This document shows, one piece after another, positions 4,321-13,696 of a stretch of 64,000 nt of DNA; positions within the stretch are counted from its first letter, which is position 1; each line of letters opens with the position of its first letter. The notes under the pieces are model-generated. The model made no database searches. It saw only the letters and a program-made list of their open reading frames with translations, and was not told the DNA's origin. The position numbers and the translations under genes are program-made. Origin of the DNA: Blepharisma stoltei ATCC 30299. Lineage: Eukaryota > Protista > Ciliophora. The stretch is taken from assembly GCA_965603825.1 (NCBI GenBank), contig CBFDEM010000027.1, forward strand, positions 186,001 through 250,000, in the 5' to 3' direction.

Positions 4321-6456
4321 TTATACATATTCTTCAAGCTCTCTCATCACATCTCTTTTTTTAGCATGATACTCCTCAATCATTTTTTTTTGCTCTTCAG
4401 TTTTCTTTTTCCTTTTCATTTCTGCTTCTTGTTTAAACCTTTGCATTTTTTTATTTTCTTCTTCAAGTTGGAATTTTTTTGCTTCTTTATATGTGTTAAC
4501 TAATTTTTTCTGCTCATTTAATAGTTTTCTTTTTTTTGCTTCTTCAGCCTGCCTTTTTCTAAGCTCTTCATCTTCTTTGCGTTTTTCTTCTTCAAGCTTT
4601 TCAAGTTCTGCTTTAAACTTTTGCTTTCTGAAGCTTTCTATTTGAGCTAGCTGCCCCAATCTGGCTCGAATTTGTTTTAATTCTTTTTGTCTTGTTTCTT
4701 GTTCTTTAATTTCTTCGTCAACCCCATTGTCTTCAACAGCATATCCATGCATTTTATACCTGATGTTTAATTTCTTTGGTAGACTGTGCTGCTTTGATAT
4801 TCTAGACTCTAAGGAATTTGTAGTTGATCTGTATGTTGAATAATATGATGATGGAGGAGATCGTTTATATTGAGAACCTGGGATATGTTCACAAGGAGGA
4901 AATTGACCACATTGAGAACAAACTGCTTTTCTTGAATGTCCTACAGATGAAGGAGATATAGCTCCAGTTACATTTGGGGAGAAATCTGAGTATTTTCTCA
5001 TTTTTTGAGAATTTGGAGTTTCATCTCTTCTATGTTGATTGCTTTCTTGAGTATCATAAATTGGTGAGTTTATATCAGAATCCTGATAAGTCATTTCTAC
5101 ATCATTTGCAAGCCCATTATGCTGTAACTCCAATCTCAACTTTTTATTTTCGACTTTTAATTTCTCCACTTCTTCAATCGTATAAGTATTTGTTATTTTT
5201 TTCAGTTTCTGGTTCTCTTCCCTTAGTTCCCATATTTCTTTATTAAGCTCTTCTAGTCCACCTTTCCGCTTTAAATTTAAAATTGACTTTAGATGCTGGA
5301 TTTCTCTTTGAAGCTTTAAAACAAGCTCGTCATTTGTGGCGGAAATTTCATTTTTTTTGATTTTTACCATTACTTGTTTGGCTCGATCTGCAAATTTTAG
5401 AGTGCTTATCGTTTCTTCAGCATATCCAGCTGATGGGGAAACTGTTGCAATGAGAATAGTTCTAGTGCTTACCCCTAAGGAATCTTGGAGAAGCCTTGTG
5501 AGCTTAGAGTCTCGATAAGGAATATGTGTAGCATTTCCTGTTCCTAAGCAAAAAATGACTTTTCCAAGCGCTGACAAAGATTTGTTGATTTTAGTTAATT
5601 CTTGGACATGTTCATGAGCCATAGTGTTTTCTTTATCATACTTTTCAGACCCTGCCAAATCACAAAAATTTAATTTTCCTTTTTTAAGTACTCCTCTCTT
5701 ATTTGCTTTATCCCTTTCCAAAAGAAGCTGAAAAATAGTATGAGACCTACTGCTATGATGATTAAACCTAGTTTGTCTAACTGCTCTATTTCTATCCCCC
5801 TTCGCAAGTAGCATAAAGCAATCTTCCGCATTTTCTACCACAAATTCTGCAAGCCCTTCCACATAAATCCCATACATTTTGCTTTCCCTGATATTCAGTG
5901 CTTTATCTCTTCTCGGATCTTGTAACAAATCATAAATTTTTTCATTATAAATCTGTAAAAAACTCGAATAATAAGTAATTTCTTTTTCTTGAGTATTCTG
6001 AAAAAGCATAGCGATTGATTTAGGAATAATCCCTTGCTTTATTGGATTATCTAATGGGTGATCAATACTCTCTAGCTGGCTTTTTCTACGCATTTGTGCT
6101 CCATTCTCATAGTAAATTTGTGCAGCTGGGTTATTCATTTCTCAGTCAGCCCCAAACATCGTATATGTTTTCCCTGAGCCAGTTTGTCCATATGCGAATA
6201 TTGTGCAATTAAATCCTTTTATGGTTTGTCCCAAAGCAGGAGAGACGAAATCGAAGATTTCGTCCTGTGAAGCTTCAGGTCGAAAAATTTTATTGTAAGT
6301 GCTTGATATGTAATGTTCTCCATCACTGACTCTGATTTCTTCGTTCTAAATAACGGTTACCTCGCCGAAGTATACAATTGTGTCTTGGCTTCTGTCAATT
6401 GATAACAATGGGCGAACTCTAACAGCCACTTTGAGGTTCTCAGGAGATGGTTCCAT
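4321..6456 (-). CDS. N-terminal motor kinesin with coiled-coil tail, one 15-nt intron
   Basis: NLKVAVRVRP, FAYGQTGSGKTYTM, SSRSH, DLAGSE, HIPYRDSKLTRLL; one TGA read through; intron 6346-6360. Confidence 0.93.
6346..6360 (-). other. 15-nt spliceosomal intron (kinesin)
   Basis: GTAACCGTTATTTAG, phase 0, ends in an in-frame TAG. Confidence 0.9.
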
Positions 6457-6490: not shown

Positions 6491-7159
6491 TTACTCTGAG
6501 CCTACCCACAGCTTCATATTTTCTTTTATTATACCTGCTAGTTGTTCAACCTCTCCATGCTCCTTGACTGGATATTCAGCATTATTTATTGTATTCAACG
6601 CTTGTTTTGCAACTTCAAGGGCTTTGATTTTGTTATCAAGGATTTCGTAATAAAAAACTGAAAAATTCAAAAGGGATCTGAGAAAAACGAGCTCATTGAC
6701 ACAATAATTAGAAAACTCCATTACTTTTTGATAAGCTAATAAGCTTTCTTCAGAGGCTTTAGAGTGTTCTTCTTCTGTGGAAACTTCAGCAATATAGCGG
6801 TATGCATCACCTATAAGCTTAAAAGCTCGGACTTTTTCTCTTTTCTCGTAAAGAAAAGGAAGCACTTTTATGTCAATTAAATTGATAAGTCGCTGGCATT
6901 TTGCGATTATTTCTTTTGTGACTCGTGATTTATAGACTGTGTGGAGCAAAGGGAGGTTTGTGGATTCTTTAGCTTGCTGGGAAAGAGTTCTTCACCCTTT
7001 TCGTGTGCTGGCTAGTACAAATCTGAAAGATTTCTCGAGGAGCTCTAAATGGCTGCTTATAATTGTTTCTTGCTTTTCGAGGTAGGTAAAAAGAAGCTCG
7101 AGTGTCTGCTCATATCTCCCACATTTCAGGCCTAAGTCTGCCTTTTTCAAAATATCCAT
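6491..7159 (-). CDS. Divergent 14-3-3 family protein (222 aa)
   Basis: RKG(TGA=W)RTL, GDAYRYIAE, LNFSVFYYEIL, IIKENMKLW. Confidence 0.85.
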
Positions 7160-7326
7160 TTTTATAATATAGGCATTAGCAAGGAATTGGGGATCTTTAT
7201 AATTCTCTTAGTTAATTTCAAATATAATGCTCTTTAATTATTATTTTAAAAGAAATTGCTATTCTTTAAACCTTAAAAATAGTTTACTTAAAAGCTTTAA
7301 AAAATTAATATTTATCTTGTAGTAAA

Positions 7327-8278
7327 ATGGGATGCTGCTCTGGAAGAGTATTTTCTACTTAGATACAAAAGCCGATGGAAGATCCTAACTTAATAAAAAT
7401 AAAGCAAGGCCACGAAATAGTCGATAAAACTTATTTTTCAAGTGTTGCCAGTAATTATATCAGCAACAAAAATAACTACTATCGAAAAAACTTTAATGTT
7501 GCATCAGTAGACAGCAAGCATTTAAATCAAGAACTAGAGTAAAATTCAACTTAGAGAGCTTAGTTTTATAAGGTCAAACGTCAACCTAGAAAAGCTCTTA
7601 AAGCTTTTATCGTCAAACACCAAAATAACGATGGATGAAGATGTTGTTTTACACTCTTGGGCTGAAAACCCAAAAACAATAGGGACACTTGCAACAATTC
7701 AATTAGGAATTTTCGCATCAGACAAGGACATCTCTCATGAATCATCCTTTACAGACGCAATCTTAAAAACGGGAATTGTCGATAAGTTGCTTGAATTTAT
7801 AAACAGCCAGGAAAGAGACAAATTTGAAGCAGCTGTGCTTGCCATTAGTTTTCTATCTGAAAACAATGCAGATATTGTTGAAACTTTAATCAAGAAAAAT
7901 GCTTTGCCTGCATTGATAAGGCATATGAGGGATCCAAAAGAAGGCCTTAAAGGAACAGCAGCGTTATGCTGCAGGAATTTATATGTTGCAAGGCCTAGTG
8001 TCCAGCAAGAGTTCATCCAAGAGCAAGGGAGCGGCCTTTTAATCAAATTGCTACGATCAGAAGACAGTGTCACAGTTTTTGAAACGATATTGAATCTTTT
8101 AGATCTAATTTTAGACGACGAAGACACCATCCAACAAGACGTCAAGCAACACCTACAAAGTTTCGACATCGTCGACGAGCTAGACCGAATTATCTTTGTA
8201 AACTCTACACAGGACACATCAAGATACGAGCAAGACACAATAAATGAAGCTGTCAAGCTTAAAATGCTATTTAATTAA
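7327..8278 (+). CDS. ARO: N-acylated armadillo-repeat protein, ARO-like (306 aa), introns 7348-7362 and 7539-7554
   Basis: MGCCSGR start; two tiny introns join it in frame to ORF 7631-8278; HSWAENPKTIGTLATIQLGIFAS, DKFEAAVLAISFLS, AALCCRNLY resemble apicomplexan ARO motifs as I recall them. Confidence 0.8.
7348..7362 (+). other. 15-nt spliceosomal intron
   Basis: GTATTTTCTACTTAG, phase 0, in-frame TAG. Confidence 0.88.
7539..7554 (+). other. 16-nt spliceosomal intron
   Basis: GTAAAATTCAACTTAG; removal shifts exactly into the frame of ATG 7631. Confidence 0.85.
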
Positions 8279-8291
8279 TAACTCTAATAAA

Positions 8292-9092
8292 ATGCAAAGT
8301 GAGAAAAAGTTCATAACAGATGGAATCAAGCAAAATTGCAGATGTGACGGCAGAGGCATTTTATCCTCCCGACGTATCAAAATAGAAAAAGGAGTCTGCA
8401 CACTTTCTCCTGGAAGTGCCCAGCTTAATATTGAATTGTCCTCACCACACATTATATGTGGCTGCAAACTCGAAATTGGAGTGCCTGAAGTAGAAGATGA
8501 AGGAATTGTCAACTTAAGCATAGAGCTTGCTGGAAAATCACTAATGACTGACAAAGAAAGGATGGCTGAGGTGAAATCTCTTATAGAAATGCTGATGCTG
8601 AATTATTTTAATAAGAAGCAGCTATGTATTATCCCAGGCCGCAAGTGTTGGAAACTGTTTATTGACGTAGAAATCCTTGACAAGGACGCAAGCAATTTGA
8701 TAGAACATATAAGCTTGACCATAACGTCAGCATTAGAAGATGTGAAAGTTCTAGCCACAGAAGGGATAGTAAATAAAAACACAAAAGAAGAGTATATTGA
8801 AATTCTGGATGGGACAGTTAGGATTAATATTGATGAACTGCCAATCATTACGACTGTTGCTCAAATAAATACCAGTTCAGTCCTTGATTTAACTGCTGAA
8901 GAAGAAGGATGTGCAGACAGCTTGCTTCATTTTTCTATTGACAAGAATGGAACAATTAAAGGAATCATTAAAGAAAACCCTGGAAGACTTGCAGTAGACC
9001 AAGTTCTTTCAGCAGCAAATATCGCAAAAGAAGTTGCTGCACACATATTTAGTGACTTAGGAACAGGCTCAATTAAATATAAGCTGAGTTAA
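8292..9092 (+). CDS. RRP42: RNA exosome RNase PH-like subunit RRP42/EXOSC7
   Basis: SEKKFITDGIKQNCRCDGR, GSAQL, QLCIIPGRKCWKLFIDV, DLTAEEE; start taken at ATG 8292 just after the upstream stop. Confidence 0.85.
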   Translation: MQSEKKFITDGIKQNCRCDGRGILSSRRIKIEKGVCTLSPGSAQLNIELSSPHIICGCKLEIGVPEVEDEGIVNLSIELAGKSLMTDKERMAEVKSLIEMLMLNYFNKKQLCIIPGRKCWKLFIDVEILDKDASNLIEHISLTITSALEDVKVLATEGIVNKNTKEEYIEILDGTVRINIDELPIITTVAQINTSSVLDLTAEEEGCADSLLHFSIDKNGTIKGIIKENPGRLAVDQVLSAANIAKEVAAHIFSDLGTGSIKYKLS

Positions 9093-9659: not shown

Positions 9660-10544
<885 letters not shown>

Positions 10545-12823: not shown

Positions 12824-13696
12824 ATGGTGGACATACTGGGGTGCACTTTTGTAGCTCTTACTTATATGTTTTTGGCATTGGGCGAGGGGATTGTAGTTTT
12901 TCAGCTTATCCCTCTATGATTTACAAAAAATAATGAGTATACTTGGGCTGGGATTTTTTGGATGATTATATATAATATATGCATGATTTTGGCAATTATT
13001 TCTCATCTAAAAGCTCTTCTTGGCGATCCCGGATACACTCCTAACCTTCAAATTCCTGACAGCATTCCTCTAGAACGATTGCGATACTGTGATAGATGCA
13101 GCCAATGAAAACCTGAAAGAACTCACCATTGCAGCACTTGTCAGAGATGTATACAAAAAATGGACCACCATTGCCCCTGGATAAACAACTGTGTTGGTGC
13201 TAAAAATCAAAAATCTTTTGTTTTGTTTCTAGTGTACGTATTTTTAGTGTGCTTGCTTACACTGATAATTATGAGCAGCATTACTTACTGGTATTTTACA
13301 AGATCATCAAAAAGAGTAGTATCAGGCAGCTTATTTTTGTTTATTGCAAGCGTAATGACTTCAATATTTGCTTTAACTTTTATGCTATTTACTGCGATTA
13401 TGTTCTGGGAACAGTTGTGAGCAATAATCCACAACCAAACAGAAGTTGAAGAAATGAACCGAAGAATAGCACCGCAAAAGCCAATTTTTGAGAACCTAAA
13501 GAATTCAATGGGTATATCCGTAATTATGTGGTGAAATCCCTTTGCTGAGCCCCCTGAGCCTGATTATATGGAGCCACTTGAAGTTCAACCAAAAACAGAG
13601 TCCAGTACATGAGTATACTGGGTTGGATACGCAGTATGTGGCTGCGTTATTTTAGCTGCAACGTTTATAATTGTCAAAGTGATATGGATAAAGTAA
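12824..13696 (+). CDS. DHHC palmitoyl acyltransferase (290 aa)
   Basis: DPG, CDRCSQ(W)[30 protein letters not shown]; five TGA read through; extra C-terminal hydrophobic helix. Confidence 0.93.

What the first reader, a model, noticed from the sequence alone, without database searches (positions are those of the whole stretch)
7327..8278. Apparent orthologue of the apicomplexan rhoptry-positioning protein ARO in a free-living ciliate
Seen: two tiny introns hide an MGCCSGR N-terminus (Gly2 myristoylation plus di-Cys palmitoylation) on a ~300-aa armadillo-only protein. Established: ARO (Armadillo Repeats Only) of Toxoplasma/Plasmodium is an acylated ARM protein that clusters and anchors rhoptries apically. 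From memory of ARO, its motifs HPWAADPKTIGAL..TQLAILAS, DRVHAAVVALSFLS and A..CRN line up in order with HSWAENPKTIGTLATIQLGIFAS, DKFEAAVLAISFLS and AALCCRNL here. Inference: an ARO-based organelle-positioning module predates the ciliate/apicomplexan split and may dock extrusomes or pigment granules at the cortex, paralleling the shared Nd6/Nd9 exocytosis machinery. The standard-code ORF call misses the acylation signal completely.
Basis: partly seen in the sequence, partly recalled or inferred. Interest (0 to 1): 0.82.

Follow-up and report, generated by a model that had tools for sequence, protein, structure and literature searches.

The report
ARO rhoptry-anchor relative in Blepharisma
A free-living ciliate (Blepharisma) has an expressed gene for a true relative of ARO, the fat-anchored protein that malaria and Toxoplasma parasites use to hold their invasion organelles in place, so the ARO family goes back to the common ancestor of ciliates and these parasites; its job in the ciliate is untested.

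Summary
The + strand gene at 7327-7278... precisely 7327-8278 has three tiny introns, not two: 7348-7362, 7539-7554 and 8198-8212. All three are absent from transcript contigs of four runs. The product is 301 aa, not 306, starts MGCCSGR, and is identical to an already annotated Blepharisma stoltei protein (P0001).

It belongs to the ARO family:
- Best solved-structure hit is PfARO 5EWP (E 2.6e-24; Foldseek TM 0.86).
- A profile built only from apicomplexan, chromerid and squirmid AROs finds this gene as the best hit in the whole 41-Mb genome (E 9.4e-49).
- Profile against profile gives E 1.8e-47.
- In the tree the ARO-like family separates from importin and other ARM proteins (100/98). A ciliate-type clade (99/97) sits beside the myzozoan clade (94/89).
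- The CC-x-G-R acylation motif and the HxWAxxPxTxG motif are shared.

It is one of three close paralogues and at least five family members in this genome, so it is a co-orthologue.

Function is inferred only. No localisation data exist, AIP and ACβ could not be searched, and no MyoF-type myosin was found.

The scan met this before on other DNA: paralogues of this genome (s1-629542, s1-657734). I found no paper naming a ciliate ARO.

Verdict: new member of a known kind, moderate interest.

The parts
7327..7347 (+). Exon 1: MGCCSGR. Gly2 is the predicted N-myristoylation site; Cys3 and Cys4 are the predicted palmitoylation sites.
   Evidence: Translation. Equals P0001 residues 1-7. RNA contigs start at 7322-7332. 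Fits the PROSITE-type myristoylation pattern, and the CC-x-G-R motif is shared with apicomplexan AROs.
7348..7362 (+). Intron 1, 15 nt, gtattttctacttag
   Evidence: Left out in contigs of all four runs. GT..AG.
7363..7538 (+). Exon 2: low-complexity N-terminal linker with a conserved (I/V)DK.YFSS stretch
   Evidence: Translation. P0001 residues 8-65 plus two bases of codon 66. Conserved in the paralogues and in environmental homologues L018 and L020.
7539..7554 (+). Intron 2, 16 nt, gtaaaattcaacttag
   Evidence: Left out in contigs of all four runs.
7555..8197 (+). Exon 3: the armadillo-repeat body, homologous to ARO
   Evidence: phmmer against PfARO 5ewp_A, E 2.6e-24, one collinear stretch. 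Myzozoan ARO profile hits 7580-8209 at E 9.4e-49. AF2 helices 58-300, pLDDT above 90 over most of it.
7652..7720 (+). Family signature HSWAENPKTIGTLATIQLGIFAS (residues 99-121)
   Evidence: Aligns to PfARO HPWAADPKTIGALSATQLAILAS. The H.WA..P motif is present in about 100 family members of the exhaustive search. Invariant columns H99 W101 A102 P105.
8198..8212 (+).
   Evidence: Left out in contigs of three runs; the fourth contig ends there. Absent from P0001 and from the paralogues.
8213..8278 (+). Exon 4: C-terminal helix and TAA stop (8276-8278)
   Evidence: P0001 residues 281-301. RNA contigs end at 8292-8309.

Best explanation
The gene encodes a Blepharisma member (co-orthologue) of the alveolate ARO (armadillo repeats only) family.

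Shown here:
- the spliced, expressed 301-aa product;
- specific homology to ARO in sequence, profile, fold and tree;
- the conserved N-terminal MG..CC.GR motif.

Inferred mechanism. N-myristoyltransferase (one gene in this genome) acylates Gly2 as the protein is made. A membrane-resident DHHC palmitoyltransferase then acylates Cys3 and Cys4, which traps the protein on the cytosolic face of one organelle membrane. There the short ARM superhelix acts as an adaptor and recruits partner proteins that hold or move the organelle.

By analogy with TgARO/PfARO on rhoptries, the single most likely target is a cortical, lysosome-related secretory organelle (pigment granule or other extrusome). I put that specific target at only about 0.3.

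The confidence given below is for ARO-family identity plus an acyl-anchored adaptor role.
For: - Gene model and expression.
- Best PDB sequence hit is PfARO 5ewp_A, E 2.6e-24, as a single collinear stretch (query 11-196, chain 28-216). The next hits are designed ARM proteins at 4e-15, reached through multiple repeats.
- BLASTP: 34% identity over 192 aa to P. gaboni ARO (E 5e-31); 29% over 266 aa to Neospora ARO, including the N-terminal CC (E 9e-32).
- Reverse test: a profile of apicomplexan, chromerid and squirmid AROs only (A3), run against the whole genome, finds this gene first (E 9.4e-49). The two close paralogues follow (6e-45, 7e-34).
- hhalign of the ciliate profile against the myzozoan profile: probability 100, E 1.8e-47, 213 columns.
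- AF2 model pLDDT 86.5. Top Foldseek PDB hit is 5ewp_A, E 4e-12, TM 0.86 by target, rmsd 2.6; the next hit is at 8e-8.
- Nearest ESM Atlas cluster by features is a 288-aa Arm cluster, commonest phylum Apicomplexa (score 0.96).
- Tree: ARO-like family 100/98 against importin-alpha and other ARM proteins; ciliate-type clade 99/97; myzozoan clade 94/89, with branching close to the species tree.
- N-termini: MGCCSGR here, GGCCSGRE in Cryptosporidium, MGNNCCAGRD in Plasmodium, MGCCAGR in an environmental ciliate. 74 of 113 likely complete family members start MG..CC.
- NMT and many DHHC enzymes are encoded in the genome.
- ARO's acylation-dependent rhoptry anchoring and positioning role: PMC3567180, PMC13432881.
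Against: - There is no localisation, acylation or loss-of-function data for any ciliate member.
- Identity to apicomplexan ARO is only about 30-34%.
- The gene has two close paralogues, and the genome holds further ARO-like subfamilies. One of these (P0178) has a hydrophobic, weakly TB2/DP1/HVA22-like N-terminus instead of MGCC. Family members therefore probably serve several membranes.
- The known ARO partners could not be shown. No myosin with a WD40 tail exists among the four myosin-head loci. AIP and ACβ were not searchable.
- CpARO already shows functional drift within Apicomplexa (PMC13432881).
Confidence: 0.8

Rival explanations
1. It is an ARO-family, acyl-anchored adaptor, but it works on a membrane other than extrusomes or pigment granules. 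Candidates are the plasma membrane or alveolar sacs, phagosome/lysosome, contractile vacuole, or ER. On this reading the paralogue families divide different membranes among themselves, and the rhoptry role is a myzozoan specialisation.
For: - The family is expanded: three close MGCC paralogues plus P0143, P0178 and further MGCC-ARM loci.
- A subfamily has a reticulon/REEP-like hairpin N-terminus, which suggests ER-type membranes.
- Dinoflagellates also carry many paralogues.
- There are at least 120 DHHC matches, so many possible target membranes.
- No MyoF-type myosin was found.
- CpARO behaves differently from TgARO (PMC13432881).
Against: - The only experimentally known role of the family is on rhoptries, which are related to ciliate extrusomes.
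- Among all Blepharisma members, this gene is the closest to the myzozoan ARO profile.
Confidence: 0.45
2. It is a generic ARM protein or a Vac8-like protein that acquired an MGCC acylation signal convergently. On this reading the resemblance to ARO is repeat-level similarity only.
For: - ARM repeats give broad cross-hits: designed ARM proteins at 1e-15, importins at 1e-5.
- Vac8 clusters rank 2nd and 8th by features in the ESM Atlas, and Vac8 tops the shape search there.
- TgARO itself has been described as homologous to Vac8p (PMC3567180).
Against: - The alignment to ARO is a single full-length collinear stretch, about nine orders of magnitude better in E-value than to any other solved ARM protein. 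No entry named Vac8 is among the 60 best PDB sequence hits listed (E up to about 4e-5).
- Reciprocal best hit in the genome.
- Family-specific motifs lie outside the generic repeat consensus.
- 100/98 support for the ARO-like family against importin-alpha and other ARM proteins.
- Length is 301 aa, against roughly 510-600 aa for the Vac8 clusters seen.
Confidence: 0.03
3. It is an ARO-family protein that is not stably membrane-anchored in the ciliate. It would be a soluble or shuttling ARM scaffold, as the nucleo-apical shuttling reported for PfARO suggests.
For: PMC4734682 reports nuclear and apical pools of PfARO. Acylation here is predicted from sequence only.
Against: MG..CC is strictly kept in all three paralogues, in P0143, and in environmental ciliate homologues L018, L020 and L021, despite divergence of the residues around it. 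That argues for selection on the anchor.
Confidence: 0.1

Closest known systems
ARO (armadillo repeats only protein) of Apicomplexa: TgARO TGME49_261440, PfARO PF3D7_0414900 (PDB 5EWP), CpARO
   Same: - Size of about 270-300 aa and ARM-only architecture.
- Gly2 plus a Cys-Cys acylation motif followed by x-G-R.
- The HPWAxxPxT(I/V)GxL..QL.I.AS, D(R/K)..AAV.A(L/I)SFLS and CRN motifs in the same order.
- Fold TM 0.86 to 5EWP.
- Reciprocal best hit and a common clade in the tree.
   Different: - About 30-34% identity.
- A longer N-terminal linker: the ARM body starts about 25 residues later.
- Three close paralogues and further subfamilies, against a single copy in apicomplexans (two in Chromera, PMC13432881).
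- The host has no rhoptries.
- Partners MyoF, AIP and ACβ are not demonstrated.
- Function is untested.
Yeast Vac8p, with its palmitoyltransferase Pfa3
   Same: An N-myristoylated and palmitoylated ARM protein on the cytosolic face of a lysosome-type organelle. It acts as an adaptor for organelle inheritance, tethering and fusion, so the working logic is the same. Vac8 clusters are the next-nearest named clusters in the ESM Atlas.
   Different: The Vac8 clusters seen are about twice as long (roughly 510-600 aa). No entry named Vac8 is among the 60 best PDB sequence hits listed. Vac8 lacks the ARO signature motifs. The ARO-like family is a separate clade from the other ARM proteins sampled; no sequence known to be Vac8 was in that tree.
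Paramecium Nd9p and the Nd6/Nd9/NdP/Fer2/CRMP exocytosis machinery shared by ciliates and Apicomplexa
   Same: This is the precedent for extrusome and rhoptry factors conserved across Alveolata. Nd9 also contains ARM repeats (PMC3567180, PMC13739732).
   Different: Nd9 has no acylation signal. It acts in rosette assembly and exocytosis, not in positioning (PMC3567180). It is a different family from the protein here.

Membership tests
ARO (armadillo repeats only) family | Short (about 270-300 aa) protein made of armadillo repeats only, with no other domain | tested here: met
   301 aa. Pfam finds only Arm, plus weak ARM-type matches. The AF2 model is all-helical from residue 58 to 300.
ARO (armadillo repeats only) family | N-terminal Gly2 myristoylation site with adjacent double Cys for palmitoylation (sequence motif) | tested here: met
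   MGCCSGR fits the G-{EDRKHPFYW}-x(2)-[STAGCN]-{P} pattern. Compare MGNNCCAGRD in Plasmodium and GGCCSGRE in Cryptosporidium. The motif is kept in the paralogues and in environmental ciliate homologues.
ARO (armadillo repeats only) family | The protein is actually myristoylated and palmitoylated, and membrane-bound through these lipids | not testable with these tools
   Only the enzymes can be shown: one NMT gene and at least 120 DHHC matches in the genome.
ARO (armadillo repeats only) family | Specific, full-length collinear sequence similarity to experimentally characterised AROs, reciprocal at genome level | tested here: met
   - PfARO 5ewp_A is the best PDB hit, E 2.6e-24.
- BLASTP E 5e-31 and 9e-32 to the Plasmodium and Neospora orthologues.
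- The myzozoan-only profile has this gene as its best hit in the genome, E 9.4e-49.
- hhalign E 1.8e-47.
ARO (armadillo repeats only) family | Family signature motifs (HPWAxxPxTxGxL..QL.I.AS; D.xxAAV.ALSFLS; CRN) in order | tested here: met
   The sequence HSWAENPKTIGTLATIQLGIFAS has one substitution (P to S) at position 2 of the first motif; paralogue P0006 has HPWA. Alignments are; the family-wide survey is.
ARO (armadillo repeats only) family | Groups with AROs rather than with other ARM families in a tree | tested here: met
   IQ-TREE with 60 rows: ARO-like family 100/98 against importin-alpha and other ARM proteins. The window protein lies in a ciliate-type clade (99/97) beside the myzozoan ARO clade (94/89). 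The root rests on repeat-protein outgroups, so it is only moderately safe.
ARO (armadillo repeats only) family | Three-dimensional similarity to the PfARO crystal structure | tested here: met
   Foldseek top hit is 5ewp_A: E 4.3e-12, TM 0.70 by query and 0.86 by target, rmsd 2.6 over 245 columns.
ARO (armadillo repeats only) family | Sits on the cytosolic face of a secretory organelle (rhoptry) and is needed for its positioning | not testable with these tools
   No localisation or phenotype data were found for any ciliate member (literature searches).
ARO (armadillo repeats only) family | Partner module: myosin F (myosin head plus WD40 tail), AIP, adenylate cyclase beta | tested here: inconclusive
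   - Only four myosin-head loci exist. Their tails carry IQ only, IQ plus an RCC1-like propeller, or no Pfam domain. None has WD40.
- AIP and ACβ were not searched.
Vac8 | Long ARM protein; the Vac8-named clusters met here are about 510-600 aa | tested here: not met
   The protein is 301 aa. No entry named Vac8 is among the 60 best PDB sequence hits listed (E up to about 4e-5). Vac8 clusters are only second by Atlas features, behind the apicomplexan 288-aa cluster. No sequence known to be Vac8 was included in the tree.
Importin-alpha | IBB domain, ten ARM repeats and the atypical Arm_3 repeat | tested here: not met
   No IBB or Arm_3 match. Importin-alpha sequences form the outgroup in the tree.

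The most novel reading that the evidence does not exclude
Acyl-anchored ARO was already the organelle-positioning adaptor for extrusome-type secretory organelles in the last common ancestor of alveolates. On this reading the three MGCC-ARO paralogues of Blepharisma hold pigment granules or other extrusomes at the cortex. The wider ARO-like expansion would mark different organelle classes; it includes a subfamily that swapped the lipid anchor for a reticulon-like hairpin. Rhoptry positioning in parasites would then be an inherited trait rather than an invented one.
Probability: 0.25. Interest if true: 0.75.

Novelty: new member of a known kind. Interest (0 to 1): 0.55.

Why it matters
[quoted passage not shown] In July 2026 its range was extended, but only to chromerids (PMC13432881). 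In 2013 the field looked to ciliate trichocysts for a counterpart and could name only Nd9p, which lacks the acylation signal (PMC3567180).

This work shows that bona fide ARO-family genes, with the lipid-anchor motif intact, exist and are expressed in a free-living heterotrich ciliate. Named members were also found in dinoflagellates and Syndiniales. The family is therefore dated to the alveolate ancestor. This adds a positioning factor to the list of shared extrusome/rhoptry components, which so far covers exocytosis (Nd6, Nd9, Fer2, CRMPs, Nd-GTPase).

The question becomes testable in organisms suited to gene knock-down by RNAi (my own knowledge, not checked here, is that feeding RNAi works in Stentor and Blepharisma): is organelle anchoring by ARO ancestral, and what does it bind where MyoF is absent?

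The limits are clear. This is homology, not function, and the scan had already reached the same conclusion on a paralogue.

Tried and rejected
- The word-index protein searches with the exon-3 translation and with a ciliate alignment reached only Blepharisma and unnamed ciliate-like metagenome proteins. They did not reach Apicomplexa, so the exhaustive profile search was needed.
- A 97-row IQ-TREE run timed out. It was replaced by a FastTree overview and a 60-row careful run.
- The ESM Atlas shape search gave only generic ARM families and was uninformative for this fold.
- Attempts to name the ciliate-type environmental sequences failed. Records are metagenome or SRA contigs without organism names, and two proteins are not on record. 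Only the 15-nt introns point to relatives of Blepharisma. I could therefore not test whether Tetrahymena, Paramecium or Stentor have an ARO.
- P0037 (TSA GILJ01) branches near the base of the family, and its organism is unknown to me.
- AIP and ACβ were not searched, because no reference sequence was obtainable by tool.
- The MyoF search was negative.
- Linkage to a DHHC gene 5 kb downstream (window 13076-13462) was considered and rejected as meaningful. There are at least 120 DHHC matches genome-wide, and the paralogues show no such close neighbour in that list.
- The Cabrera 2012 paper that first described ARO is not held.
- The gene-model artefact reading (transcript from ATG 7631) was rejected by the RNA contigs.
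Exons were used by reference, and the whole-length steps used the database protein P0001. P0001 was shown piece by piece to equal the gene product.

Full report
**What is there**

The window is contig C27:186001-250000 of a 41.46-Mb, 64-contig genome. The gene's product is identical to a protein deposited as 'unnamed protein product [Blepharisma stoltei]' (P0001).

On the + strand an ATG at 7327 opens MGCCSGR. The coding sequence has four exons (7327-7347, 7363-7538, 7555-8197, 8213-8278) and three GT..AG micro-introns:
- 7348-7362, 15 nt
- 7539-7554, 16 nt
- 8198-8212, 15 nt

It read the third, which is in frame, straight through as VNSTQ. The protein is therefore 301 aa, not 306.

Each exon's translation is found in P0001, at residues 1-7, 8-65, 67-280 and 281-301. 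The codon split by intron 2 gives Glu66.

Exons were sent by reference, and the whole-length steps used the database entry P0001.

**Expression**

Four runs of one study hold the stretch. Their contigs lack exactly 15 nt at 7348, 16 nt at 7539 and 15 nt at 8198, and they run from 7322-7332 to 8292-8309.

The runs are only guessed to be RNA. Precise loss of the three introns shows that they derive from spliced transcripts.

The mRNA therefore contains the MGCC exon, with a 5' UTR of only a few bases in these contigs.

A naive ORF call does give only 7631-8278. The public annotation already has the full protein.

**Homology to ARO**

- Pfam sees only Arm repeats.
- Against all PDB sequences, the exon-3 translation hits PfARO (5EWP) best, at E 2.6e-24. 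This is one collinear stretch, query 11-196 against chain 28-216. Designed ARM proteins follow at about 1e-15, reached through summed repeats, and importins at about 1e-5.
- An AF2 model of P0001 (pLDDT 86.5, pTM 0.85) has 5ewp_A as its top Foldseek hit: E 4e-12, TM 0.86 by target, rmsd 2.6. The next hit is at 8e-8.
- The nearest ESM Atlas cluster by features is a 288-aa Arm cluster whose commonest phylum is Apicomplexa. Vac8 clusters come next.

**The family**

The word-index searches reached only Blepharisma paralogues and unnamed ciliate-like proteins. I therefore ran the exhaustive profile search.

It returned about 100 proteins of 230-400 aa that match as a single stretch. They share H-x-W-A-x-x-P-x-T-(V/I)-G. 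Of 113 likely complete sequences, 74 have an MG..CC N-terminus.

Members that carry a name:
- Plasmodium 'armadillo-domain containing rhoptry protein'
- Neospora, Eimeria, Cryptosporidium, Babesia, Theileria, Cardiosporidium
- the gregarine Lankesteria
- Platyproteum
- Chromera and Vitrella
- the dinoflagellates Oxyrrhis and Polykrikos
- Amoebophrya
- further Blepharisma proteins

Every named member is an alveolate.

**Reciprocity and tree**

A profile built only from apicomplexan, chromerid and squirmid sequences (A3) was searched against the whole Blepharisma genome. Results:
- the window gene first, E 9.4e-49
- C29:158487-159167, 6e-45
- C2:132262-132915, 7e-34
- C2:343429-344088, 4.5e-28
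- all others at 3e-16 or weaker

hhalign of the ciliate profile against the myzozoan profile gives probability 100 and E 1.8e-47 over 213 columns.

A 60-row IQ-TREE analysis (LG+G4, ultrafast bootstrap / SH-aLRT) gave the following:
- The ARO-like family separates from importin-alpha and other ARM proteins at 100/98.
- A ciliate-type clade (99/97) holds all five annotated Blepharisma members.
- A myzozoan clade (94/89) has inner branching that roughly follows the species tree: apicomplexans 100/99, then chromerids and squirmids, then dinoflagellates.

The simplest reading is one ARO gene in the alveolate ancestor, followed by duplications within ciliates. The window gene is thus a co-orthologue of ARO, and by profile score it is the member that has diverged least from it.

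The root depends on repeat-protein outgroups and is only moderately secure.

**The anchor**

The N-terminus fits the myristoylation pattern and carries two adjacent cysteines. The following x-G-R is shared with apicomplexan AROs:

| Organism | N-terminal motif |
|---|---|
| Blepharisma (this gene) | MGCCSGR |
| Cryptosporidium | GGCCSGRE |
| Plasmodium | MGNNCCAGRD |

Environmental ciliate homologues were called as truncated ORFs. Their DNA shows upstream MGCC exons:
- L020: MGCCSGRF, with one 15-nt intron
- L018: MGCCHRK
- L021: MGCCAGR, GC-rich, with two 15-nt introns

The genome has one NMT gene and at least 120 DHHC matches. Acylation itself is inferred, not shown.

**Function**

In Toxoplasma and Plasmodium, ARO is held on the cytosolic face of rhoptries by these lipids. 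Without it the rhoptries disperse (PMC3567180, PMC11343613, PMC13432881).

The likely working mode here is the same: a lipid-anchored ARM adaptor on an organelle. The identity of that organelle is unknown. Pigment granules or other extrusomes are the obvious candidates by analogy, and I put that at about 0.3.

Three things weigh against a simple transfer of function:
- The family is expanded. Besides the three close paralogues there are P0143 (MGCCEGRE) and further MGCC-ARM loci. There is also a subfamily, P0178/P0099, with a hydrophobic N-terminus that is weakly TB2/DP1/HVA22-like instead of MGCC.
- The four myosin-head loci have no WD40 tail. Their tails carry IQ only, IQ plus an RCC1-like propeller, or no Pfam domain, so a MyoF-type motor is not evident.
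- CpARO already departs from the canonical behaviour (PMC13432881).

AIP and ACβ could not be searched.

**Novelty**

In the searchable literature I found no paper naming a ciliate ARO.
- The 2026 CpARO paper extends the family only to Chromera.
- Beck et al. 2013 discussed ciliate trichocysts but could point only to Nd9p, noting that it lacks the acylation signal.
- The paper that first described ARO is not held.

Within this scan the same conclusion was already reached on other DNA. Notes s1-629542 (followed up: 'true relatives of ARO ... job untested') and s1-657734 concern paralogues on other contigs. I did not use them as evidence. My tests on this paralogue agree with them.

**Verdict**

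The ARO homology is real and specific. 'Orthologue' should read 'one of several co-orthologues'. The organelle-docking function and the conserved partner module remain hypotheses. This is a new member of a known kind. Interest is 0.55.

Noticed in passing
window 13076-13462 (+), = G000:C27:199076-199462: A DHHC palmitoyltransferase domain (E 1e-37) lies about 5 kb downstream of the ARO-like gene. The genome as a whole gives at least 120 DHHC matches in 41 Mb, which looks like a very large expansion. The list shows no DHHC match that close to either paralogue, so the proximity is probably chance.
   Followed up: partly
G000:C2:343405-344088 (L005/L012; protein P0178) and L022:4001-4834 (P0099): An ARO-like ARM subfamily in which the MGCC lipid anchor is replaced by a hydrophobic N-terminus. 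That N-terminus gives a weak, below-cut-off TB2/DP1/HVA22 (REEP/reticulon-like hairpin) match. It may be an ARO-type adaptor hard-wired into ER-like membranes.
   Followed up: partly
L014 (G000:C5:102946-106494) and L015 (G000:C37:163755-167300): Both distant ARM paralogues have an MGCCEGRGG start about 1.3 kb upstream of the ARM match. I did not work out whether this is a long N-terminal extension of the same gene or a conserved neighbouring gene.
   Followed up: no
G000 DHHC and myosin loci: Many conserved-domain matches contain in-frame TGA but rarely TAA or TAG. This fits TGA read as a sense codon (Trp) in this genome. The ARO-like gene itself has no in-frame TGA.
   Followed up: no
L025:3671-5032 (G000:C9, myosin tail): One of only two full-length myosins has an IQ region followed by an RCC1-like beta-propeller tail (PF25390, E 4e-72). 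This is a propeller cargo domain of a different family from the WD40 propeller of apicomplexan MyoF.
   Followed up: partly
window 8276-8310: The next gene's ATG (8292) lies 14 nt after the ARO-like gene's stop codon. Transcript contigs of the two genes abut at about 8303-8309, so the intergenic spacing is extremely compact.
   Followed up: no
L021:1930-2860 (JGI metagenome 3300010965): A GC-rich environmental ARO-like gene with an MGCCAGR start and two 15-nt introns. It suggests that micro-intron ciliates with a very different base composition also carry the family.
   Followed up: partly
P0005, P0039, P0055 (database names): UniRef auto-names call the Blepharisma paralogue 'Nucleotide exchange factor SIL1' and the Chromera and Vitrella AROs 'Fes1 domain-containing'. 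These look like misleading labels arising from generic ARM similarity.
   Followed up: no
window 4321-6138 (-), 6491-6949 (-), 9660-10544 (-): The neighbouring ORFs look, by eye, like a kinesin, a 14-3-3-like protein and a Dim1/KsgA-type rRNA dimethylase. These are ordinary housekeeping neighbours with no evident link to the ARO-like gene.
   Followed up: no
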